64,000 nucleotides of DNA from Selaginella moellendorffii (GCF_000143415.4 NW_003314265.1:572405-636404), one strand, 5' to 3'. Shown: positions 48,160-61,600, counted from the stretch's first letter. The notes: generated from the letters alone by a model not told the origin. Program-made: numbers and translations.

Positions 48160-51100
48160 AATAAGTAGCCTTCTATTATTCTCTCTATGTTGGTTAATAC
48201 AGATTCAAGTTTATCTTCTATTACTCAACCTGTTGCCATACGTTATTGTTTACACTTGCGTCGTGTAGTGGAGTTAGTTTTCATTCTTTATAGCAACAGC
48301 TGTACACATGCATGTGCAAGGGATGAGGCAGACCTATTTGTGTGTGTGGGCAATCTGCTCGGGTTGCAATTGTTACGGGTGGTGCCGAGTCAAGCTTTTG
48401 ACCTTATTTTTAGTATAGATTAGGTGCAACACAATCACGCCAAATATGACTTTGAGGCTTCTTCCCCTTGTCTCATACTTCCTTATATTACATTCATTCC
48501 TCTCACTTCTGTACCTCTTTGTCCCTCTGCTTCCATTACTTTTGTCCCTTGATTACTTCCTCCTATGTTTCTGTCTTGTTTTGCTCTTCCCTTTTTCGAT
48601 CCCTCCAACAATCTTTGTGTTGTAGCAGTTGACTAGCTTATGAAGGAGTATTCTGATCTAGCGCACAAAATGTATGATACATACACTTTGGAGAGATACT
48701 GGCTCGAACTCTCACCGTCTAGATCCCCAGATCGGCGCCTCACTGTCACGCTAGATATGATTAGCCAAACCACACCGTAGTGATTTTTTAATAGTCTATT
48801 GTCTGGGGCAAGGATTGCCACATGTCATCTGATTCCAATTGGGGATGCTCATCCAATTAAGGTTCCTATTCATTGTCGGTCACCCAAAGAGATCAAGATT
48901 TAATGTGCAAACATCAAGGAGATGTTGGAGAAGGGTGTTATTCGGAAGTCGCGGAGTTCTTGGGCATATGAACCTCATCTTGTGATAAAGCCTGATGAGA
49001 GTATTCATTTCTGTATCAACTCATTCGTTAGACGAAGTGACAATCCCAGATGTGTACCCTCTTCCTCACATTGTTGATCTCTTGGTTCGTCTGGGGTGAA
49101 GTTGTTGGTTCACTAAGCTAGATTTTGCTTCTAGGTATTGACAAGTACCGATGGCCAAAAGAGATATTTCTAAGACTACTTTTCATACATTGTTTAGTTT
49201 GTATGAGTTCTTAGTGATGCAGTTTCATTTGAACAATGCTCCAGCAACTTTCTAGCAGATGATGGACAAGATTTTTTGTGATATGCCAAAAGTGACTACT
49301 GACTTCATTGATGATGTCTTGATCCATTCGGAGGGGACGTGGGAGGAGCACATGTTTATAAAGTGTTGGATCGGTTACGGGACGTTGGTTAAAGTTGAAG
49401 CGGTCAAAGTATGTGTTTGGGTCCAAGGACATGACTTGTCTTGGGTATCATATTTCTCGTGAGGGTTTGCAAATTGATCTTGATAAACTTGTGGCTGTTA
49501 TAAAGTTCCTTATTTTAAAGTGTGTAAATGATGTGCAGCACTTCTTGGGCAAGGTGCAGTGTCTCAGTCATTTTCTAGATCATTTTTTTTATGACACTAC
49601 ACTGTTGTGAGCATTGCTAAAGTCATCAGTGTCATCTTTCATTTGGTTTGTAGATTGTGAGTGGGCGTTTATAGACCTCAAAGAGCTATTAACGACTCCT
49701 CTAGTTTTGGTGTATCCTCACTATACTCGACCTTTTATTTTGCGTATGGATGCTTCTGATATTAATTTGGGAGGTGTGTTGATGCAAGAGAACCCAAGTG
49801 TGCCTGGTCAGCACCATCCTATTGCGTATATAAGCAGTACATTACAACTAGCGAAGGTGAATTAATTCACGATAAATAAGGAGTGTTTAGCAGTAGTCTG
49901 GGGTTTTGAGAAACTTCATGCATGTCTACATAATTCTCAGACGTTACTTGAAGGTGATTATGTTGCTGTTACTTTATTATTGAAGCAAAAGAACTTGGTT
50001 GGTTGTATTGTTTAGTGGGCTTTGAAGCTTCGAATATATGATTTTGATGTTGTTTATTGCCCAGGGAGTTCTATAGCCAATGCTGATGCCCTTTCTCGAA
50101 CTCCTCTTCCTTCTCCACTCTCTTCTCATGTTTTTTACGACCCTATTGTTCTAGCATTTGTGGATTTTCTAGACGAGGATTTTATGCCGTCGGCAGGTGC
50201 TATACTTAACGTTTAGTGTCCACAAGGTGCAAAGCAAGACCTACCTTCTTTTGATGAAGTTTGCGAGGCTCAAAAGATTGAGCCATGGATTTGAAGGCTT
50301 TGAGATGGGTTTGAGAATGTTGCATCACTTGCTGATGACTTGCCATTCCGACATTTATATTTTCAATATTGCCTTGAAGACGGCCTTCTTTATTTTGTGG
50401 GGACTGATCCTAATGATCATTTACGGCTAGTGGTGCCTTCAATCTTTATTCCACGGTTTCTTCATGCCTACCATGATTCTCCTATTCTAGGTGGGCATAT
50501 AAGACATTGTCGTGTGACCGAAAAGTTGCACAGATCTTTCTATTAGCTAGAGATGCGATGCAATGTTATCTAGTATATGTGTAACTGTGTTTGGTGTTAA
50601 GCTCATAATACTCCCTCTTGTGCTACGGAAAGACGGTTGGAGTCAAGTGCAATTTCCCATCTATTTGAGTTGGTGGCATTTGATCTTATGGGACATTTTC
50701 TACGATTGAATGTTGGTAATAAGTATGTTATTATTGCTTCTGACTACTTGACTTGTTGGGTGGAAGTTAGTGCTCTTGCTAGTGCATCTGCAATTGCTGT
50801 TGGATACTTTCTTCTCAATTGAGTGGTGTTTCAGCATTCTTGTCCGAAGTGGATTCTTTCGGATAATGGTCTTGCATTTATGGCTGAGGCATTTTACGTT
50901 TTAACATCTTGGTTGAGGATACACCACACTTTTACGAGTGCTTATCATCCACAGTTAGACGGTTTGGTGGAATGGCTTGTTCGGACATTCAAAGGAATGA
51001 TCACGAAGTACGTGAACTTTCAGCATTCAAATTGGGATGGTTATTTGCTATCTCTTCAGTATGCATATATCACAGAGGTGTAGAATTATGTTGATGCTTC

Positions 51101-51560
51101 ACCATATAAACTTCTATATAGTCATGATCCAATATTACTAATAGAGTTAAGTTTACCTTTGCGATTACCATGAGCTGCCGATGGTAGGTCATGGGATCAG
51201 TATTTGACGAGCATTCTTCCACTTATCCGAGTAGAGTTTATTGAACACTAGGCCGCATACAAGTGAGACAACAATAGCACTACAACTCCCATCATCGTTC
51301 ACCTACGGAGTATAAAATGAATGACTTGGTGTTAGTCTGTTTTCCCCATTTTATAGTATGTGGTTTATCTAAAGGGTTTTTTATTCAGTGGAAAGAACTA
51401 TATTGGGTGTTATGGACCACAAGCTTATAATGTTTGGCATGACATCCAAAAAGCCAATACTCCAAAAATTATATATATGTAGCGGTTGAAATATTTTATA
51501 CAAAGGGATTAGGAATAGTTATAGATCTACTAATGCCTCCTCTTAATGTTCTTCCAGATT
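48160..51560 (+). pseudogene. Decayed gypsy pol (protease, RT, RNase H, integrase) of family B
   Basis: LVNTDSS (protease remnant), FIDDVLIHS, MDASDINLGGVLMQ, NADALSR, GGH, SDNG, AYHPQLDGLVE; many stops and frameshifts. Confidence 0.9.
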
Positions 51561-51800
51561 TCAGCTCATCTACAAAAGAACCCTAATAGTCTTCCATTGG
51601 GATAATGTGAGTGTATAGCTATAATGCTGTATATTAATATTAACATAGTGGGATTTTAGTAGTTATCAGATTAATTTTAATTTAGACCACTCATTTTTGT
51701 ATATAAGCTAAGGTTTTTGGGCTAATTGATATGCATATTCCTTTTCCATATTCCATGCACTCACAAAACTTATTTTGCAAATTAAATTTCAATTACATTC

Positions 51801-53674
51801 TGTGAGTGCATGGAATATGGAAAGGGAATACAGAAATGTGCATATCAATTAGCCCAAAAACCCTAGCTTATATACAAGAGCAAGTGGTCTGGATTGAAAC
51901 CAATCCGACAGCTACCAAAATCCCACTACGCTAATATTAGTATATGGCATCGTAGCTGTACACTTGGCCCTCACATCATCCCCTCCTCTCGGAATAATGG
52001 AAGGCCATCAGGGTTCTCTTGTAGATGGGCCGGGATCTGGAGGAACGTCAAGAGGAGGCATCAGCGGATCTGTAGACGGTATTAACTGCTCCTGATCCCT
52101 TTGTATGAAGCGTTTCAACCGCTGCACATACACAATCTCCGGAGGATCAGCCTGCTGGACGTCATGCTGAACCTTATAAACTTGCAGTCCAACTTGCCGC
52201 AACACCCAATATAGTCCTTTCCACTGTGCAAGGAGCCCCTTAAATAAACCACGTACCGTAAGATGGGGAAAACAGACTAACACCAAATCATCCACTTTGT
52301 ACTCTACAAGTGGACGATGATGGGAGTTGTAACGCCGTTGTTGTCCCACGTGTATACGGCCTAAGTGTTCGGCAGACTCTGCTCGGACAAATGGAAGAAT
52401 GCTCGTCAAATATTGATCCCATAACCTAGCATCAGGAGCTCGTGGTAATCACGAAGGTAAACCCAGCTCCGTTGGTAATATTGGATCATGACCATATAGA
52501 AGTTTATATGGTGAAGCACCAACAGAATTCTGCACCCCTATGACATAGGCATACCGAAGAGACGGCAAATAACCATCTCAATCCGAATGCTGAAAGTTCA
52601 CATACTTCGCAATCATCCCTTTGAATGTCCGAACGAGCCGTTCCACCAGACCGTCTGATTGTGGATGATAAGCACTCGTAAAAGTGTGGCGTATCCCCAA
52701 CCGAGACGTCAAAACATGAAATACCTTAGCCATAAACGTAGGACCATTATCCGAAAGAATCCGTTCCGACATATTTGGCTCCGCACGAAGCAAAAGACTT
52801 TGGAAATGAACGCCAAATTGCATCACCGATTCAGATGGCCCTTGGCGAAGACAATGCAATTGTTGGAAGGCATCGTCACAATCGTCGACATGTCCGAAAG
52901 CGTGTTTGAAGACATCCGAAAGAACACTCCAATCCCCATGAGTGGCCGCACTCAATCCATTGTACCATAGCAACACCGTCCCTTGGAGACACGTGGGAAA
53001 ATCACGCAAACGTCGAGCATCATCCCAAGAATGATACGTGGCAATCACCTTGAAGTGATCGAACCAATGGTACACATCATCCCCAGGATTCTTATGAAAG
53101 AACTCCGGCCGAACGCGAGGATTGGACCAAGAGCAGAAGGAGTTGGACCACGTGCCATGAATGCCACCATCAATTGAGTTTGGTTGTTTAATTGCAAGCA
53201 CATAGCATCAAGCAATTGAACCAATTACTGCTCTAGAGTCAAAGGAGGAAATTGTTGATTGGCCATGAAAATGAACGAAAAAGAAAGAGCAAAAGAAGAG
53301 AAATGACAAAAAAACTGGAAAGAAATGGTAAATCTAGACAATGCAAAAAGCTAGATCTAAACCAAAATTCTAAAAGGAAATAACAAAAGAAAGGAAATGG
53401 AAAAAGCTAGATCTAGACGATGCAAAAACTATATCTAAACCAAAATCCTAAATCCAAGCACTCCCCGGGGACAATCAAAGATGTCCCTCACCTCCACCAA
53501 TGTGAGTGCATGGAATATAGAAAGGGAATACAAAAATGTGTATATCAATTAGCCCAAAAACTCTAGCTTATATACAAGAGTGAGTGGTCCGAATTGAAAC
53601 CAATCCGACAGCTACCAAAATCCCACTATGCTAATATTAGTATATGGCATCATAACCGTACATTTGCCCTCACA
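51801..53674 (-). mobile_element. Family B miniature non-autonomous LTR element (1.87 kb, internal deletion derivative)
   Basis: LTRs 53501-53674 (5') and 51801-51975 (3'), 4-bp TSD ATTC (51797-800 / 53675-78), PBS TGGTGGAGGTGAGGG, PPT GAGAGGAGGGGATGA; gag N-terminus joined to integrase core. Confidence 0.92.
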
Positions 53675-54045
53675 ATTCTAAATTACTTAAAAACATTTCT
53701 ATGTTTTTTGAGTTTTAATAACACCTCTATAGAGTTTAAACATAACTATACAAAAAAAACTAGATAAGTAGAAACCTTCATACCTTTCCATGGTAGATCT
53801 TTTTGATGTTGCAAAAGAATTTACTTGTGATCTGTTATAAGCCTAATGCTTCCCTTCGAAGCCACTTTTCTGCAAGGACGCATGGTTGGCGGAATATTTT
53901 GTCATAAAGCATTTGATAACTGCACCACACACCAAACCGATAATGGTTAGAGCCCAAGCACTAGCGAGAAACAATCACCTCAACCATGAACTACAAGCAG
54001 AGAAAAATCCTATCGCTTTGTTCTTGTGCTTGTCACAGCTCTAAG

Positions 54046-55815
54046 TCAGTACAATTGATCTGGAAACAAGGACGTTAGAGCATTAAAAACCAAGAGCAAA
54101 ATCTCGTTACTCTGATCGTCGCCAAGCGGCTGGAAAGGAGCGGCATTTGCGCTCGCAAACTTTGCAGTGAGCTCCGTGTAGACGAGCTTGCTGAGCAGCA
54201 GCGCAGCGATGAGCACCGAGGTGATGAGCATCCCAAACACTGCGTCCCATCCTTTCTCCGACACGAATCCCGTTAGCAGCGGCCCAATAGCAGCACCGAC
54301 GGAGCCCGTGCCATCGATGATAGCGGTCACGGTTGCCAGAGCCTTGGAGCTTCCACTGAGCGAGCTGTGAGTGCCAAGGTCCGCGGACACGGCTGTGGTG
54401 ATGAGAGCATACGGCCCGTTGATGAAAGCTCCCAGGAAGACCATGAGCACGACGTTGCCAGCTAGAGACGAGCTGCCATAGACGCGATACAGAACCAGCG
54501 CTGGGACTGCAACGTACAGAAAAGTTGCCGCCGTGGTTGCTTTCGCGTTGAGTTGATCCGAGATGTAGCCAGCAGCAACGCCTCCAAACATACCTCCCAC
54601 GTCGAAAAGTGTGGACAATCGACCCGACATTCCATCGGAGAGATAGTTGCCAGCGATCTCTGCCCAAACAAACATAAAAAAACGCTTAGAACTATATATA
54701 ACACAAAAACTCGAAGAACACTTACTAGTATGCCTTATGTAGAACGGAAGCCAGTAGAGGAACGTATAAGCCACCAGCTTGGAGAAGAACAGGCACAGTG
54801 CGAACTGTGCAACGCCTGGAATCATCCAGGCATCAAAAAACCCCACAGCCGAGTCGTTCCTCGTCCCTGGCGCGAGAGAAACCTCCCTAAACTCCTCACC
54901 GTCGCTATTTATATCCAGGCCCTGGAACTCGCTCCCGTCGATCATGACCGAAAGGAACTTCCCGCCCATGCTTGTGCGGTTGCCTCAGCATGATCAGCTC
55001 AGGCGCCGCTGCTTGCCTTACGTACTCGCACCACCACCACCACCAACACTCGCCATCGAAGACGACATATCAACCTCTTCCGGATCCACTGCCAGGAAGA
55101 AGAAAACCACCAAAGCCGCCATAGCCATGAGAAAACCGGGAGCTACAAACGACCACCCCCAGCCATACTGCAGCATCTCCGCCGCGAGCAGCGAGCCGAC
55201 GATGTTTCCAGCCGAGGTGTGACAGTTCCAGATCCCCATGATCAATCCCCGCTTGCTCTTGTCAAACCACTTCGCGACAATGGTCACCACCGACGGCCAC
55301 CCTGTGGATTGAAAGACCCCCGCTACCATCTGGACGAGTATGAAGTAGCCTAGAGAATGGACCTTCCACCAGTAAGCCATCCCAAACAGGCACGAGAATG
55401 CCCCGCTGCCCGCCATGCCAGCCGAAAGAAAAAACCGGAGGTTGAGACGATCACCCAGATGACCCGCGAAGTACATTCCTATAGCGTAAGAAGCTAGAAA
55501 AGCTACATCTATAATCCCGAGCCTGGCTTTACCTCGACTCCCTACGAAGGGACTCCACCCCTCCCGGGCATTTCCTGGATCGATGCTGCTGGACGGGGAG
55601 AGATTGGAGCTCGGGCTCACCGCGAAGCCTGGATCCGAGTACTCCGGATGGAGCACGGCCTTGACGATGCTGATCGGCTTGCGCGCGGCGTGATAGCCGG
55701 CGTAGGCGAGGAATGTGATCCCTAGAACCGATGCCTTGTAGAATCCGAGGCTGAAATTGGAGGCGCGGCGCGCCCGGAGGAGCTGGATGCCCGGTGCCAC
55801 GGCCCGCGCCTCCAT
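54046..55815 (-). CDS. Glycerol-3-phosphate transporter/permease (MFS, G3Pp/SLC37-like), multi-exon
   Basis: [88 protein letters not shown]. Confidence 0.93.
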
Positions 55816-55881
55816 TCTCGGCGCTGGGCGCTAGGCGCGCCCTAATTAGGGCATTTTGAAAAAAAGAAGAAGATCCTACTA

Positions 55882-55889
55882 GCATATTC
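55882..55889. promoter_or_regulatory. P1BS (GNATATNC) ~67 nt upstream of the G3P permease ATG
   Basis: GCATATTC. This gene family is known to be Pi-starvation induced, but a single 8-mer is weak alone. Confidence 0.45.
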
Positions 55890-56552
55890 TACTGGGTCCT
55901 AAGGTTTGATTTTTCCGTCAAACTTATCATGCGCAAGGCTTTTGACTATTACTTTTGCTTGCTAAGGCAGCTGGATTCTTGAATGCTTGAGAGCTCGATC
56001 ATGGAGAGGAACAAAATCGTGGAATCAAAAAAACTTATTTCCTAGACTCGTGGCGAGCGAGCAGCTCTTCGAAAAAGTCTTGCTTGATTGATTGATGTTG
56101 TCTCGCTGCTGCTTGCTCGATCGATCGACATTTTTTTGCTTCGCTGCACCATCACGAAGGAGTCCCACGCACGCAAGAAACCAAAGAACTTTCGAAGGAG
56201 AGGAGAAAGAAAAGCGAAAGAAAGTTTACTTGCGTACAAACGCCATGGATTCCAGCTCACGATCCATTATAGCAACAGGATCATCGGACGTCGCAACGCT
56301 GATGGGCGAACTGGTGGTGGTGTGTGGTCACCTAACTTTGAGCCTGCAAAACGGAGATAGTTACCTAACAAAGGCATCTATCACCAGTGAAGTAAGCTTA
56401 GCTCTCCAGTAACCGCAACCTTTGATTTATAGCTACTTCTCGCTTTCACCAATCACATACACATTACACGGCAGCAGCGGCAGTCCTGAGATGCGAAAAA
56501 CAGCAAAACTTTCGGTCAAGAACCAATCCAAAAACTTTCACGTACACGAACC

Positions 56553-57951
56553 TCAAAGTTGCGACGGCATCTCCTCCACCAAGTTCCTCGACCGGGACCT
56601 CGATCTCTCCCGCTCGCTCTCGCTCCGGTGTAGCATCGCCTTGATGTGGAGAAAGACGTCCATCCTCTTCTCTTGCGGCGTCGGTGCCGGAGCCGGAACC
56701 ACGGCCTGTGGCGGCGGAGGCGCGTAGAATTCCTCCTCGGTGGTCATCATCTGTGGCTGCTTATTCGCGACGAGCCGGAACACGACCCCAAAAATGGTTC
56801 CAGCGATGAACGGACCGGCCCAGAACACCCAGTGGCAATCCCAGAGCGTGCTTCCCTGGACGATGGCCGGTCCCAGGCACCTCGCGGGATTCATCCCAGC
56901 GCCCGAGTAGTATGGAGACTTGAGCTGCGACGAGATGAAAGTAAACAGTCCTGCCGCGCCACCGATGCTGAGAGCAGCGAGAATTGGACCAGTCTGGCGA
57001 AAGTTCCCGGGCTCGAGGAGAGTCGAGTAGGCCACGAAAATGAGAAGAAACGTGAAGAAGATCTCCGAGATGAGCCCCGCTCGCGGTGTGAGTCCCTCCG
57101 GCCACTCGAGCCCCCGAGAGGTTCTCACAACTTCTCCGAGCAGGCACCCGGCGAGGGAGTTTTTCTCGACGAAGTCCCGCGCCACCACCTGTTTTGCTGC
57201 CAGAGTCCCGATCAAAGCTCCCAAGCTCTGCGCTGCCATGTAGAGCATTGCTCGCACCGCGGTCGTGTGGCCCGTGAGCATGGTCGTGTATGTGAAGATC
57301 GGGTTGAGGTGCCCGGCGCCCACCCACACGGACAGTGCCGCGAGAATGCACGCCGCCCAGACGAGGAAGTAGACGAGAGCGATGGCGATTCCTCGCTGCT
57401 TGAAATCCACGCACGCGGCAATGCCGGTTATAAGCGCGAATTGGAAAGCCGAGAAGCCGACGAGCTCGACCAGAGTTCCACGCCACACCTGAAATGAAAG
57501 GATTTTTTTTTTTCTTTCGAGAGACCGAAGAATTCATAGCTTACCTCACAGTTTGTGAAATCCATCAGACCCAAGAAGCGCTCCATTCGGCCGCTCCACG
57601 TCAGGGGCGGCGCGGGCAGCCCTTTGTCCTTGAATGCTTCCTCATCCATCGCCATTCCAGGTCGCGGAGGCTGCCCATATACTGGCGGGGATTGGTACCC
57701 CGACCCGGTGGGAATGTAGTAGCTCGTGCTGGGATCGTGATTCGACCTGGAACAAGGAAAATTCCCATCAATCCGGCATCCAAAACCCCAAATCCGAGAT
57801 CGAAGCACAAGAATCCCCCGGAAGAGAAAGAGAGAAGGAGAGAGAGGACGCTGCCATACCTGTATCGTCCAGAATGTGTCACTGGCTGGAGCTCGCCGCT
57901 GCGATAGCTGGTGCCGGCGCCTCCACTCTCAATCTGGAAAGACGAAGACAT
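56553..57951 (-). CDS. XIP: Aquaporin, X intrinsic protein (XIP) subfamily, 3 exons
   Basis: Six TM helices; variant first motif GHLNPI and second motif GMNPARCLGP (NPARC is the XIP signature). Confidence 0.85.
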
Positions 57952-58282
57952 GGCGATCCCCTATCGGATCGATCCACAGCCTCTCTGTGTTAATGCGGAA
58001 GAATCCAGGCGAGCCCTAGCGGGATCGTGGGCCGCGCATTGCGTGGGAGTGGAGGAATGCGCTGATGAGCTCGACCGCCGCCGCGCCGCAATAAATGCTC
58101 CTCTCTCGCACTGCCGGGGACCGAGGCGGCGGATCAGGCGACCTAAAGACACAGGACAAGAGGAACGTGTGCCAGTGTAGCGGCGGCGGCGGCGACGTCT
58201 CCTCCCTCCACCTCACCTCCGCCGCCACTCCTCCGGGAATTTGAATTGTAGGCACCCGTTAATTAAAATAAAAATCCCCCCA

Positions 58283-58572
58283 GAATATCCCTTCACAGCA
58301 GAGCAGAATATTCTCCCCGCGGAGCCACGGGCAGAATATACCCCTACGAACTGACAGAATGTGCCCCGAGATGTGAATTTCTGGCAGAATATGCCTCGCT
58401 TGCTGGTGCGTTGCGGGTCCCTTGGCCCTTTCTCTTCAATCCCAAGGTATAAGCACGGAAGCTCGCTGACTGACAGGTTCGACCAGAAGAGAGTCCACTC
58501 GCTCCACTCCCGCCCGCAAATTCTAACGCCAACCCGGGGGAATATTCGTCTGGGAATATTCTCGGCATATCC
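58283..58572. promoter_or_regulatory. Cluster of seven P1BS (PHR1-binding, GNATATNC) motifs upstream of XIP
   Basis: GAATATCC 58283, GAATATTC 58306, GAATATAC 58334, GAATATGC 58387, GAATATTC 58540, GAATATTC 58554, GCATATCC 58565. Confidence 0.75.
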
Positions 58573-58677
58573 AGGGTTTAGCGCGTCGTGGTTTTTTTGT
58601 TTTGTGGTGTCGGTTTGGAGGTTTCTCTCGTTTCATAGTCTCACTGTGCGTGTGCGTGCGCGTGTGTTTTTTTAAGC

Positions 58678-61600
58678 TTACGGGGGAACAGGGAAGTCTC
58701 TCTCGTTGGCTCGCCGGTACAACACCGTGGACGCCTCTACCCTGATAAACAAAAAAAATACGTTAGTCCCGAGTGGCTTTGGAACTGCTTATAAGAAGAA
58801 AAAAAATGCTGGGTCTTTTTTCTTCTTGTCTCGGTACCAAGCAGGACGAACGAGAAATCTCCCAGTTGCCAGAGCCCAGTTCGACTATAACACAACACAA
58901 AAAAAGAAAAAAAGAAACGAGTTTGAGCAACTTTTGATCGAGTTTTTGATCGGTTTCTTACTTTGTCTGTTCCCATGGAGATCGCAACGACGTGCGTGAC
59001 ATCCTCCTCCATCCTCGTCGTGCAAACCGCTCCGAATTGCTCGGCCATCCTCCACAGCGGGTGGAGCTGCGGCTGCGTCTCCTCGACGGGGAAAACCCGG
59101 CTAAAGATGATCTTGCAGCCACCGAGTATGCGTCTCTGGACAACGGAGAGAACCTCCCGGATATCGACTTCCTTTGGAAGCGGCCGGGAGTAAAACTCCT
59201 CGTGAACTCGCTCGACCACCTGGCTCGTAAAAAGTAAGCTTCGCTCGATAGAAACGAAAAAGAAAAACGAAAGAAAGGAAAGAAAAGAGTTTGTTTTGTT
59301 GGCTTACTCCTAGTATGGATGCTAGCATTCCATCGGCTTCTCTCTCGTCGTGTCCCACCTCTAAAAGCGAGGGGCCGGGCAGTCCAAATTGTTTCCTGCT
59401 GCACGGAAAATACATATATCTGCAAAGTCTCTAATCGTCAGCAAGGCAACGAAGAACACAAAGATCAAGAGGAACAGAAAAAAGAGAAAACAACGAAGAT
59501 CACAAAGACCAAGAGGAACAGAAAAAAGAGAGAAAAAAAGAACTTGGAACTTTAAAAGAGGGACCCGGGAGATGGTATACCTTTCCACCACGATTAAGTT
59601 ATCTTTGTGGTGTGGCCAGACGCGTGCAGAGTCATCGATGATAAGCACTGCCGACTCCATTCCAAGCACTCCATCCAAATCTTTGCTCCTCGGGGTCTTC
59701 TCGTCACCGTAGAGCGCATCACCGTCATCGCCTTTAGAAATCACGCGGCCAGCAAAGAGGACTCCAGTTGGATCCAGAAGCTTGGCCATCTCGGTTGCGT
59801 ATGCTTTGTTGCCCATTGTGTAGAGGTGAAGCTCGTAAAGTTGGCTTGCCTGGAAACAAGAAAAAACACGTTTTTAAGAAAGACCTTTCAACAATCGAAA
59901 AAAGAAAACGAAGAAAGATAATCACCCGTGCGAGAAATCTCCAAATGCCAGGCCTAAGCTTTGTCCACATTGACATGTAAGGAAACCGGTAAAGTTCCCT
60001 CCGAGTTCCTTCTTTCGCGTCTTTGTTCCGCTCGATGGTCTCGGTGGCACGCAAAAATCGATCCCATTCTTGCTCGATCTCCATAAACTGGAAGAAAAGA
60101 AGAATAAAAAACCATAAGCAAAAACAACAAAATAAGATGCAACAAGAGTAATCACCTTTGCAGAATTCAAGAGTGTGTGATCAAGGTCCAGCACAAGGCA
60201 CAGCTTCTTTTCACTCAGCATCTTGTCCTGCTCGTCCATCCTCCGTTGTCTCTCCTTGATAAAAGCAATGCGCTCCGCCTCGTCGAGATCAATCAAAAAC
60301 TCTTGCAGTTCCGGATGGATGTCTAACTCGGTTCCATTCTGTAAAACGGGAGGAGAGCCCGCTTCTAGTCCCGGAATGCTGGGAAACAATCCTGGAATGT
60401 TGGAAGGAGGAAGAACTTCAACCGTGTCCTTCACTTGATTCCTCAACTCTGGTGGCTTTGGTGGTCGCACAGTACCATTTTCCAGACTTGTGATATGCTG
60501 CTCCTCCTGATTCGTGGTCTCGGAGAGTGCACGCCTTGGATCGCGAGGTTTCATCTGATCAAAAAAGGAAAACAAAGAAGAATGAAGCAAGGAAAACATG
60601 AAAGGATGTAAACAGACCAGTATGGATTTGCCATCCTTAGCTTCGGGCTCCAGCCATCCTCCACTGCGGGGAGCCGCCTCGCTCTGAAGCTTCTGACGCT
60701 TAGAAGTTTGTGAGTCGGGCTTTAACGCTTCTCGTTTTCTGGAGGGGTTTCCTTCCAAGGCACCACGTCGGGGATCTCGGGGTTTTAAAACTGGTTGAGA
60801 ACCGGTCTCGGTTTTGTCAGTTAAAGTTTTCCCGTATCTCGCTGCTTCGTCCTCTTTCGAGGGAGTCGGGCTGGGAGGAAGATCATCCATCGGGAACGAC
60901 GCAGACATATAGTGTGTGTACGACGTCAGTGAGGACGAGGTTGGGTGCTCAGCGCTCGTCCCTCCATCCCATGGTATATAAGCGTGCTCCTTACCATCGC
61001 TGCTAGTCTCAAGTTTTGGGTTGACGGCTTCATACAGAGCCTTGAGCTGCGAGTTTTTTCCGCGTGTTATCCTCAATCAAGAAAAAAAATGACCAAAAGT
61101 CTCCTCACTTCTTCCACTTGTTTCGCCGTGAACAGTTTATCCGTGTAGAACTTCGCCAGCTTAGCCAGACTGGAGAAAGAAAAAAATGTGAGCGATTGCC
61201 TTGTACAAAAATAACAAACCTTTGCAGGACTCCGGGTTTTTGCTCGTCTCCTATCGCGTTATAAACCTGATGGATCCCATCAGCAAAGTGAGAAACAAGC
61301 ACAGGAAATCCAGCACACTTACGCAGTAAACGATCCGAATCTTGTCTAAAATCTTCAACACGAGCGATTGAACCAACTCGCAGTTGGGCGATTTCTTAGA
61401 TGGTTGATCCAGCTCCTCCAAAATCTGCAAAGCATCGTGGAGCTGGGCGCATGCGTCGTTGGGAGACCTGCAAAAGCACCAATAGCTCCATCAAACATTC
61501 CATATCCATCCCCGGAAGGAAAAAAGAAGGAGAGAAGAGGGACGAAAATATAACAGAGAATAAACTTACTTGCATGCATTCCCCACGCTAACGTTGTTAA

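What the first reader, a model, noticed from the sequence alone, without database searches (positions are those of the whole stretch)
54046..58572. Candidate phosphate-starvation glycerol/G3P module: XIP aquaporin with seven P1BS sites, in tandem with a G3P permease
Seen: seven perfect GNATATNC motifs within 290 bp (58283-58572), 330-620 nt upstream of the XIP ATG; about 0.07 would be expected at equal base frequencies. The first four share a CA prefix, and the spacers are not tandem repeats. The next gene on the same strand is a G3P permease with its own proximal P1BS. Known: P1BS is bound by PHR1-type MYB-CC factors controlling Pi-starvation and mycorrhizal genes; G3Pp genes are Pi-starvation induced; characterised XIPs conduct glycerol and other small solutes. 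Inference: a PHR-controlled gene pair handling glycerol and G3P released by phospholipid remodelling or symbiosis.
Basis: partly seen in the sequence, partly recalled or inferred. Interest (0 to 1): 0.78.

Follow-up and report, generated by a model that had tools for sequence, protein, structure and literature searches.

The report
P1BS array before spikemoss XIP aquaporin
In the spikemoss Selaginella moellendorffii, seven copies of the DNA motif that plants use to switch on phosphate-starvation genes fill the short promoter of the aquaporin gene SmXIP1;3. The array is real, but this motif is common in the species' promoters, and neither a phosphate response nor a working link to the neighbouring transporter gene is shown.

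Summary
Observation confirmed. Seven perfect GNATATNC sites lie at 58283-58572, where 0.05-0.08 are expected, plus one degenerate eighth site. They are not a tandem or dispersed repeat, and all seven are kept in the second haplotype.

The window is S. moellendorffii scaffold_4 (GL377569.1). All three genes are on the minus strand: a CPL3-like phosphatase, SmXIP1;3 (already annotated by Anderberg 2012), and a PS3/G3Pp-type SLC37-like MFS transporter.

Spliced RNA contigs fix the gene models. The array sits just upstream of a TATA-like box and the probable XIP transcript start. It also lies 106-395 nt past the CPL3 stop codon, so it is partly inside that gene's 3' UTR.

Interpretation only partly supported:
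- No phosphate-starvation or binding data exist.
- GNATATNC is a general promoter-proximal motif here: 10 of 24 other genes have 1-2 sites, so the transporter's single site carries little weight.
- "G3P permease" is a name only. The closest characterised relatives exchange glucose-6-phosphate for phosphate.
- XIP-G3Pp adjacency and the array are absent from the other lycophyte and moss loci checked.
- The window's G3Pp copy carries a compensated frameshift.

The scan had already noted similar arrays elsewhere in this genome, but not at this locus. Verdict: a new member of a known kind, of moderate interest.

The parts
58283..58394 (.). Proximal sub-array. It holds four perfect GNATATNC sites (58283, 58306, 58334, 58387) and a degenerate fifth (GAATGTGC, 58357-58364). 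All have the flank CAGAAT on the + strand, and the spacings are 23, 28, 23 and 30 bp.
58540..58572 (.). Distal sub-array of three perfect sites: GAATATTC at 58540 and 58554, and GCATATCC at 58565. Spacings are 14 and 11 bp. It lies 106-138 nt downstream of the CPL3-like stop codon.
58262..58277 (-). AT-rich, TATA-like element (TTTTTATTTTAATTAA on the minus strand), between the array and the start of XIP exon 1.
   Evidence: Its function is inferred; a strict TATA[AT]A pattern is not matched.
57858..58251 (-). SmXIP1;3 exon 1. It carries the 5' UTR, a 7-codon uORF (58039-58016), and the RefSeq ATG at 57951 with the first 31 codons. The 5' limit is approximate: contigs end at 58240-58251, and 58252 is a heterozygous SNP.
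57543..57744 (-). SmXIP1;3 exon 2. It includes the internal ATG at 57655 that Anderberg 2012 used as the start.
56552..57486 (-). SmXIP1;3 exon 3, holding the MIP domain: NPI at 57297-57305, loop-C LAGC at 57144-57155, NPARC at 56877-56891, and the stop codon at 56553-56555.
55891..56484 (-). SmXIP1;3 exon 4, the 3' UTR downstream of a 66-nt intron that starts right after the stop codon. The 3' limit is not fixed, because contigs break at polymorphisms.
55882..55889 (.). Single GNATATNC (GCATATTC on +, GAATATGC on -), 67-74 nt upstream of the G3Pp ATG and within or next to the end of the XIP 3' UTR. It is kept in the other haplotype.
53979..55873 (-). PS3/G3Pp-type (SLC37-like) MFS gene. ATG at 55815; exons 55873..54726, 54659..54111 and 54059..53979; stop codon at 54046-54048. 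A further 3'-UTR intron lies at 53920-53978.
54974..55020 (-). Frame-shifted stretch in the central loop of the window's G3Pp copy. Two compensating 1-nt indels enclose 3 in-frame stop codons. The other haplotype and all RNA contigs carry the intact frame.
58678..58741 (-). Last coding exon of the upstream CPL3-like (NIF + BRCT) phosphatase gene; stop codon TAA at 58680-58678. Its 3' UTR or read-through runs into the array.

Best explanation
The 427-bp gap between the CPL3-like stop codon and the SmXIP1;3 transcript start is almost entirely a homotypic array of GARP/MYB-CC-type binding sites. It holds seven perfect GNATATNC (P1BS) sites and one degenerate site.

The most likely working is as follows. 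Dimers of MYB-CC factors of the PHR/PHL group dock at many closely spaced sites next to a TATA-like box and drive SmXIP1;3 transcription cooperatively. If the factor is the SPX/InsP8-gated PHR, expression should rise steeply when phosphate falls. The three palindromic GAATATTC sites could also take NIGT1/HHO repressors.

Shown: the motif array and its statistics, its allelic retention, its position relative to the spliced transcripts, and the XIP identity.

Inferred: which factor binds, and that phosphate is the signal.

The PS3/G3Pp-type neighbour is best read as a separate, tightly packed transcription unit, not as part of a demonstrated glycerol/G3P module.
For: - Motif and statistics: seven sites where 0.05-0.08 are expected; the largest cluster in 300 shuffles is 3.
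- All seven ATAT tetranucleotides have the G-N...N-C flanks.
- There is an extended shared consensus, but the spacers are unrelated, and there is no tandem or dispersed repeat.
- All seven sites are retained in the 98.2%-identical second haplotype. It has 9 SNPs in the 290 bp; eight fall between sites and one at a free N position.
- Spliced contigs from four studies put XIP exon 1 at 57858 to about 58240-58251. Depth falls 2- to 10-fold upstream of 58252 in three of the four runs. The array is therefore about -30 to -320 from the probable start, behind an AT-rich box.
- None of 24 other S. moellendorffii promoters sampled has more than 2 sites.
- PHR1- and NIGT1-subfamily factors exist in S. 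moellendorffii. PHR1 dimers bind GNATATNC and NIGT1 dimers bind GAATATTC (PMC11082045).
- No competing motifs are present: no HSE trimer, evening element, GAATC, W-box or G-box.
Against: - There are no binding data, and no phosphate-starvation transcriptome of Selaginella was found.
- XIP1;3 contigs are present, at depths at or above those of the neighbouring CPL3 gene, in all four runs laid. The conditions of those runs are not known to me, so the gene is not silent without deliberate starvation (contig depth is a poor measure).
- GNATATNC is a general promoter-proximal motif in this genome. There are 13 sites in the upstream 400 bp of 24 other genes against 2.6 expected, and several of those genes look like housekeeping genes. 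The binding factor may therefore have a broader role than the starvation response.
- The exact transcript start is not mapped. The contig ends at 58251/58253 and 58498/58499 coincide with heterozygous SNPs.
- The array is also transcribed at low depth as CPL3 3' UTR or read-through.
- It is not conserved in other XIP promoters.
Confidence: 0.5

Rival explanations
1. The array is an unusually dense instance of a general S. moellendorffii promoter element. A GARP/MYB-CC factor that is not gated by phosphate, such as an APL/PHL-like or other clade member, reads it. It would then set constitutive or tissue-specific XIP1;3 expression rather than a starvation response.
For: - Ten of 24 other genes have 1-2 GNATATNC sites within 400 bp upstream: 13 sites against 2.6 expected, P about 3e-6. 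They include MRP-L47, an Fe-S protein, MinE, a DEAD helicase and an annexin.
- XIP1;3 was assembled in all four RNA runs laid.
- Earlier unchecked scan notes list arrays before diverse genes, and one note says clusters mark many housekeeping promoters.
Against: - PHR targets are numerous in other plants too, so frequent single sites do not exclude PHR.
- Several array-bearing genes in the scan notes belong to classes that those notes link to phosphate signalling in other plants (a PHR-like gene, a DIPP-type Nudix).
- Both G3Pp paralogues carry sites.
Confidence: 0.3
2. The main reader of the array is a NIGT1/HHO-type repressor, linking nitrate and phosphate status, acting at the palindromic GAATATTC sites.
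For: - Three of the seven sites are GAATATTC, the NIGT1 dimer site (PMC11082045).
- The rice PS3/G3Pp orthologue Os08g0156600 is a DAP-seq target of OsNIGT2/3 (PMC12263960).
Against: - Four sites are not GAATATTC.
- One GAATATTC becomes GAATATGC in the other haplotype.
- The second NIGT1 motif, GAATC, is absent from the whole intergenic region.
Confidence: 0.1
3. The repeated units act at the RNA level or in termination. They would belong to the 3' UTR or terminator of the upstream CPL3-like gene, not to the XIP promoter.
For: - The array lies 106-395 nt after the CPL3 stop codon.
- It is covered by contigs at about CPL3 depth.
- One contig (run X9) runs unbroken from the CPL3 last exon into XIP exon 1.
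- The five proximal units all have the same orientation.
Against: - The conserved core is a DNA palindrome.
- The distal units carry the extended flank in the opposite orientation.
- There is no Rfam match.
- Similar sites lie upstream of many genes with no 3' UTR nearby.
Confidence: 0.05
4. The XIP and G3Pp genes form a phosphate-starvation glycerol/G3P module. They would be co-regulated by PHR and functionally coupled through products of phospholipid breakdown or through symbiosis.
For: - The two genes are adjacent on the same strand with almost no spacer, in both haplotypes.
- The PS3/G3Pp family is starvation-induced in Arabidopsis and rice.
- Dicot XIPs conduct glycerol, and LjXIP1 is induced by mycorrhiza (PMC6549384).
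Against: - The substrate of plant PS3/G3Pp proteins is unproven, and their nearest characterised relatives carry G6P (PMC3176764).
- SmXIP1;3 has its own ar/R filter, L-T-A-R, and has not been assayed (PMC3355642).
- The contig depth ratio XIP:G3Pp varies from 0.9 to 4.3 between runs.
- There is no synteny in Diphasiastrum.
- No MYCS/CTTC or AW-box elements are present.
- The single G3Pp site matches the base rate.
- The window's G3Pp copy is frame-shifted.
Confidence: 0.1

Closest known systems
P1BS-containing phosphate-starvation promoters controlled by PHR1/PHL MYB-CC factors
   Same: The 8-bp motif GNATATNC is identical, the position is promoter-proximal, and PHR1- and NIGT1-type factors are present in the species (PMC11082045).
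   Different: There are seven perfect sites plus one degenerate site in 290 bp, filling the whole intergenic space. From my own knowledge, natural starvation promoters usually carry one or two sites, and multimerised P1BS is otherwise a synthetic-reporter design. Inducibility is untested here, and the motif is also common in promoters of unrelated genes in this genome.
Other dense P1BS arrays noted by this scan in S. moellendorffii (PHR-like gene, GFT1/CBS pair, MYND F-box, RSH1/ribokinase, GASA pair, DIPP-type Nudix)
   Same: Same genome, same motif, similar density and short promoters. Those reports likewise describe the arrays as lineage-specific and untested for phosphate response.
   Different: The downstream gene differs: this is the first at an aquaporin. 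I did not re-check those loci.
XIP aquaporins (NtXIP1;1, HbXIP2;1, LjXIP1; SmXIP1;1-1;3)
   Same: MIP fold, a first NPA box with Ala replaced (NPI), the NPARC motif, and a loop-C cysteine. The gene is the published SmXIP1;3 (PMC3355642, PMC2386804).
   Different: The ar/R filter is L-T-A-R. The RefSeq model has a roughly 100-residue N-terminal extension and a long Pro-rich C-terminus. No transport data exist, and no XIP has yet been tied to phosphate nutrition.
Plant PS3/G3Pp proteins and animal SLC37A1/A2
   Same: Strong full-length similarity: rice Os08g0156600 at E 2.6e-157 and human SLC37A2 at E 1.8e-128. The family is starvation-induced in Arabidopsis and rice.
   Different: G3P transport is not shown for the plant proteins, and SLC37A1/A2 are G6P:Pi antiporters (PMC3176764). 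The window copy has an interrupted frame.

Membership tests
P1BS / PHR-regulated starvation promoter | Sequence GNATATNC | tested here: met
   Seven perfect sites, all kept in the second haplotype.
P1BS / PHR-regulated starvation promoter | Sites lie upstream of the transcription start of the regulated gene | tested here: inconclusive
   Exon-1 contigs end at 58240-58251 and depth drops upstream. However, 58252 is a heterozygous SNP that breaks contigs, and the array is transcribed at low depth.
P1BS / PHR-regulated starvation promoter | A PHR1-type MYB-CC factor is present in the organism | not tested
   Taken from the literature only: PHR1 and NIGT1 subfamily proteins of S. moellendorffii appear in PMC11082045.
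P1BS / PHR-regulated starvation promoter | Binding by PHR, and induction of the gene on phosphate starvation | not testable with these tools
   No phosphate-withdrawal RNA data or binding data for Selaginella were found, and the reads tool was capped at one call.
P1BS / PHR-regulated starvation promoter | The motif discriminates starvation genes from other genes in this genome | tested here: not met
   Ten of 24 unrelated genes carry 1-2 sites within 400 bp upstream. Only the number of sites is exceptional.
XIP subfamily of MIPs | MIP domain | tested here: met
   PF00230, E 2.4e-30; TIGR00861.
XIP subfamily of MIPs | First NPA box with Ala replaced, NPARC after the second box, and a conserved loop-C cysteine (LGGC) | tested here: met
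   NPI, NPARC and LAGC are found. The criteria come from PMC2386804. The gene coordinates equal those of the published SmXIP1;3.
XIP subfamily of MIPs | Glycerol or other solute permeability | not testable with these tools
   No assay exists for SmXIP1;3. Its ar/R filter, L-T-A-R, differs from that of its paralogues.
Plant PS3/G3Pp (SLC37-like organophosphate:Pi MFS) | Full-length similarity to PS3/G3Pp and SLC37 proteins | tested here: met
   Rice Os08g0156600 at E 2.6e-157; SLC37A2 at 1.8e-128; GlpT at 1e-10. Sources name it 'putative glycerol-3-phosphate transporter 1'.
Plant PS3/G3Pp (SLC37-like organophosphate:Pi MFS) | Intact reading frame | tested here: not met
   The window copy has two compensating 1-nt indels enclosing 3 stop codons at 55020-54974. 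The frame is intact in haplotype L001 and in the RNA contigs. The RefSeq model P0077 steps around the defect.
Plant PS3/G3Pp (SLC37-like organophosphate:Pi MFS) | Transports glycerol-3-phosphate | not testable with these tools
   The nearest characterised relatives carry G6P (PMC3176764).
Conserved co-regulated gene pair (module) | The adjacency is conserved in related species | tested here: not met
   Diphasiastrum XIP loci L002 and L007 have no G3Pp gene within 5-6 kb, and its G3Pp locus L004 has no XIP within 10 kb. The Ceratodon XIP locus L006 has no G3Pp.

The most novel reading that the evidence does not exclude
S. moellendorffii has evolved lineage-specific, very dense P1BS arrays (5-13 sites) as high-gain phosphate-starvation enhancers. 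SmXIP1;3 would then be the first XIP aquaporin under direct PHR control. That would give this aquaporin subfamily, which so far has no known physiological role, a job in phosphate-starvation metabolism, for example moving glycerol or another small solute during membrane-lipid remodelling.
Probability: 0.3. Interest if true: 0.6.

Novelty: new member of a known kind. Interest (0 to 1): 0.4.

Why it matters
No XIP aquaporin has a demonstrated role in the plant (PMC6549384). A promoter made almost wholly of PHR-type sites gives a sharp and cheap hypothesis to test in a lycophyte: does phosphate control SmXIP1;3?

More broadly, this genome carries many such arrays, and I found roughly 5-fold promoter enrichment of the motif. 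Together these suggest that GARP/MYB-CC sites play a larger part in Selaginella promoter architecture than in the angiosperm models. Anyone inferring a phosphate regulon from motif counts alone should take that into account.

Tried and rejected
- **Chance or composition.** Rejected by shuffles and by the local expectation.
- **Tandem or dispersed repeat.** Rejected: TRF finds nothing in the array, and BLAST against about 180 kb of held sequence finds only the allele.
- **Other motifs.** Heat-shock element, evening element, NIGT1 GAATC, W-box, G-box/PHO element, mycorrhizal MYCS/CTTC and AW-box are all absent from 58240-58680.
- **Structured RNA.** No Rfam family in 53800-59200.
- **Exact transcript ends from contigs.** Abandoned, because the contig breaks at 58252, 58499, about 55874 and about 55892 coincide with polymorphisms between the haplotypes.
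- **Purifying selection on the sites from allelic SNPs.** Nine SNPs, none at a fixed motif position, but the chance probability is about 0.24, so this is not significant.
- **Conservation of the array.**
  - The S. moellendorffii XIP paralogue has only 2 sites, shared with MinE.
  - Ceratodon has none within 4 kb, and one Diphasiastrum XIP none within 2 kb.
  - The other Diphasiastrum XIP has 3 sites at -962 to -662.
  - The Ceratopteris locus gave no DNA.
  - P0077 and P0079 were not on record for locus retrieval.
- **Literature.** Searches for a Selaginella phosphate-starvation transcriptome, or for any XIP linked to phosphate starvation, found nothing relevant.
- **Joined protein search.** Exons, unspliced in-frame references or database proteins were used instead.
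Full report
**What is there**

The window is Selaginella moellendorffii, scaffold GL377569.1 (JGI scaffold_4), at about 572405-636404. Two results fix this. A window GRAS gene maps there exactly. The published start of SmXIP1;3 ("sc 4, minus, 630059", PMC3355642) equals window position 57655.

Three genes lie head-to-tail on the minus strand:
- a CPL3-like phosphatase (NIF + BRCT);
- an XIP aquaporin;
- a PS3/G3Pp-type MFS transporter.

A second copy of the whole block, locus L001 on GL377574.1, is 98.2% identical over 8.5 kb. It is the other haplotype.

**The observation**

GNATATNC occurs at 58283, 58306, 58334, 58387, 58540, 58554 and 58565.
- The expected number in 290 bp is 0.05-0.08 by every composition model I tried.
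- The largest cluster in 300 block-shuffles of the window was 3.
- Every ATAT in the stretch lies inside a site.
- A degenerate eighth unit (CAGAATGTGC) sits at 58355-58364.
- The five proximal units share gCAGAATATnCCc, but their spacers are unrelated.
- TRF finds no tandem repeat in the array.
- The segment matches nothing else in about 180 kb of held sequence except its allele.

**Gene models from RNA**

Contigs of four runs from four studies are spliced with GT..AG introns on the minus strand, so they are RNA. For the XIP they give:

| Part | Coordinates |
|---|---|
| Exon 1 | 58251..57858 |
| Exon 2 | 57744..57543 |
| Exon 3 | 57486..56552 |
| Exon 4 (3' UTR) | 56484..~55891 |

This agrees with the 409-aa RefSeq protein P0001, which has one residue different from the window in the main coding exon (exon 3). 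The ATG at 57951 is in frame through both introns. A 7-codon uORF precedes it. Anderberg et al. started the protein at the internal ATG, 57655.

The protein has the XIP hallmarks set out in PMC2386804: NPI in the first box, NPARC after the second, and a loop-C cysteine in LAGC. This gene was already known as SmXIP1;3, with ar/R filter L-T-A-R.

**Where the array sits**

Reading the CPL3-like gene through its last two introns gives ...NWALATGRFLVRPAWVEASTVLYRRANERDFPVPP*, with the stop codon at 58680-58678. Only 427 bp then separate that stop from the start of XIP exon 1, and the array fills most of it.

An AT-rich TATA-like element (58277-58262) lies between the last site and exon 1.

One caution applies. 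The contig ends at 58251/58253 and 58498/58499 coincide with heterozygous SNPs, so they are assembly breaks and not transcript ends. Even so:
- contig depth falls across 58252 from 92 to 9, from 106 to 48 and from 54 to 9 in three runs;
- one exon-1 contig ends at 58240, away from any SNP.

I therefore place the main XIP start at about 58240-58250, which puts the array at about -30 to -320. The array is also covered at roughly the depth of the CPL3 gene, and in run X9 one contig joins the CPL3 last exon to XIP exon 1. It thus doubles as CPL3 3' UTR or read-through.

**Allelic comparison**

All seven sites survive in L001. Nine SNPs fall in the 290 bp: eight between sites, and one at a free N position (GAATATTC to GAATATGC). 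This fits constraint, but it is not significant. The probability that none hits a fixed position by chance is about 0.24.

**What reads the array**

GNATATNC is the P1BS of PHR1-type MYB-CC dimers. GAATATTC, which accounts for three of the seven sites, is also bound by NIGT1/HHO dimers. Both subfamilies occur in S. moellendorffii (PMC11082045).

Competing motifs are absent. I found no three-unit heat-shock element, evening element, GAATC, W-box or G-box, and no mycorrhizal MYCS/CTTC or AW-box elements. No Rfam family matches. A GARP/MYB-CC reader is the best-supported inference.

**How specific is the motif here?**

This is the main qualification. I took the 24 other S. moellendorffii genes with annotated starts in loci L001, L003, L005 and L008.
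- Ten have one or two GNATATNC sites within 400 bp upstream.
- That is 13 sites against 2.6 expected from composition (P about 3e-6).
- None has more than two.
- The ten include a mitochondrial ribosomal protein, an Fe-S protein, MinE, a DEAD-box helicase and an annexin, as well as both G3Pp paralogues and the CPL3-like gene.

The motif is therefore a general promoter-proximal element in this genome. This agrees with an earlier unchecked scan note (s1-388241) and with notes of dense arrays before quite diverse genes.

Two things follow. The XIP1;3 array stands out by its number of sites, not by the presence of the motif. And the single site before G3Pp (55882-55889, kept in both haplotypes) matches the base rate and says little.

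**The transporter**

The MFS protein matches three solved structures:

| Match | E-value |
|---|---|
| Rice Os08g0156600 | 2.6e-157 |
| Human SLC37A2 | 1.8e-128 |
| E. coli GlpT | 1e-10 |

Os08g0156600 is the rice counterpart of Arabidopsis PS3/G3Pp1. It is listed among rice phosphate-starvation genes and is a DAP-seq target of OsNIGT2/3 (PMC5253468, PMC12263960). Family membership and its link with starvation are sound.

The substrate is not. SLC37A1, once called G3PP, and SLC37A2 are glucose-6-phosphate:phosphate antiporters (PMC3176764). A "glycerol plus G3P" pairing therefore rests on names.

In the window copy, two compensating 1-nt indels (near 55019 and 54974) put 15 codons out of frame and create three stop codons. 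L001 is intact, and all RNA contigs carry the intact version. The RefSeq model P0077 steps around the defect. It is either a poorly expressed allele or an error in the scaffold.

**Synteny and conservation**

- Neither Diphasiastrum XIP locus has a G3Pp gene nearby, and its G3Pp locus has no XIP within 10 kb and no P1BS within 5 kb upstream.
- The S. moellendorffii XIP paralogue has two sites, shared with MinE.
- The moss Ceratodon XIP has none within 4 kb.
- One Diphasiastrum XIP has none within 2 kb; the other has three at -962 to -662.

The array is specific to this lineage, and the gene pair is not a conserved unit.

**Verdict**

The best reading, at about 0.5, is a multi-site docking platform for MYB-CC factors that drives SmXIP1;3. 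Phosphate gating is plausible but unproven.

A general, non-starvation use of the same element is a serious rival, at about 0.3.

The proposed glycerol/G3P module has little support, at about 0.1.

I found no paper linking any XIP to phosphate starvation, and XIPs still lack a known physiological role (PMC6549384). The hypothesis is therefore worth a simple experiment with and without phosphate. As it stands, this is one more member of a class of P1BS arrays that the scan has already seen elsewhere in this genome.

Exons, in-frame unspliced references and database proteins were used.

Noticed in passing
window 54974-55020 (minus strand): The window's copy of the PS3/G3Pp gene has two compensating 1-nt indels, with three in-frame stop codons between them. 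The stretch also has unusually many substitutions: about 11 in 100 bp, against 1.6% overall. The other haplotype and the RNA contigs of three studies carry the intact frame, and the RefSeq model P0077 hops around the defect.
   Followed up: partly
S. moellendorffii loci L001, L003, L005, L008: GNATATNC is about 5-fold enriched in the 400 bp upstream of annotated gene starts. There are 13 sites against 2.6 expected, and 10 of 24 genes have 1-2 sites, several of them housekeeping-type genes. The sites often fit a longer palindrome-like consensus, CAGAATATTCTG.
   Followed up: partly
L003:8749-10001: The second S. moellendorffii G3Pp paralogue lies head-to-head with an inositol-phosphate kinase gene that has the Ins134_P3_kin domain (ITPK-type). 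Two GNATATNC sites (9657, 9679) lie in the shared 1.25-kb spacer. From my own knowledge, ITPK-type kinases feed the inositol-pyrophosphate pathway that plants use to sense phosphate.
   Followed up: no
window 56485-56551 and 53920-53978: Both the XIP and the G3Pp genes have a small intron in the 3' UTR. The XIP intron begins one to two bases after the stop codon. The XIP 3' UTR (about 600 nt) ends within a few tens of bases of the G3Pp 5' end, so the two transcription units nearly touch or overlap.
   Followed up: partly
window 58016-58039 (minus strand): A 7-codon upstream ORF (MRGPRSR*) lies in the SmXIP1;3 5' UTR, ahead of the RefSeq start codon.
   Followed up: no
window ~50000-53675: Ty3/gypsy-type retrotransposon fragments (integrase and gag-like ORFs) lie directly downstream of G3Pp on this haplotype. 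Similarity to haplotype L001 stops at window 53675, so the insertion looks haplotype-specific.
   Followed up: partly
P0001 residues ~370-385 and P0002 C-terminus: SmXIP1;3 and a 41%-identical transcript-derived XIP (P0002, EukProt, species not given) share a C-terminal motif, KRMDVFLHIKAM(L/M)H, after a proline-rich stretch. The other XIPs I looked at do not have it.
   Followed up: no
L003:19560-20200: An AT-rich, hairpin-like element with long inverted arms, resembling a MITE, carries four GNATATNC sites. Small clusters of the motif can therefore also come from transposable elements.
   Followed up: no
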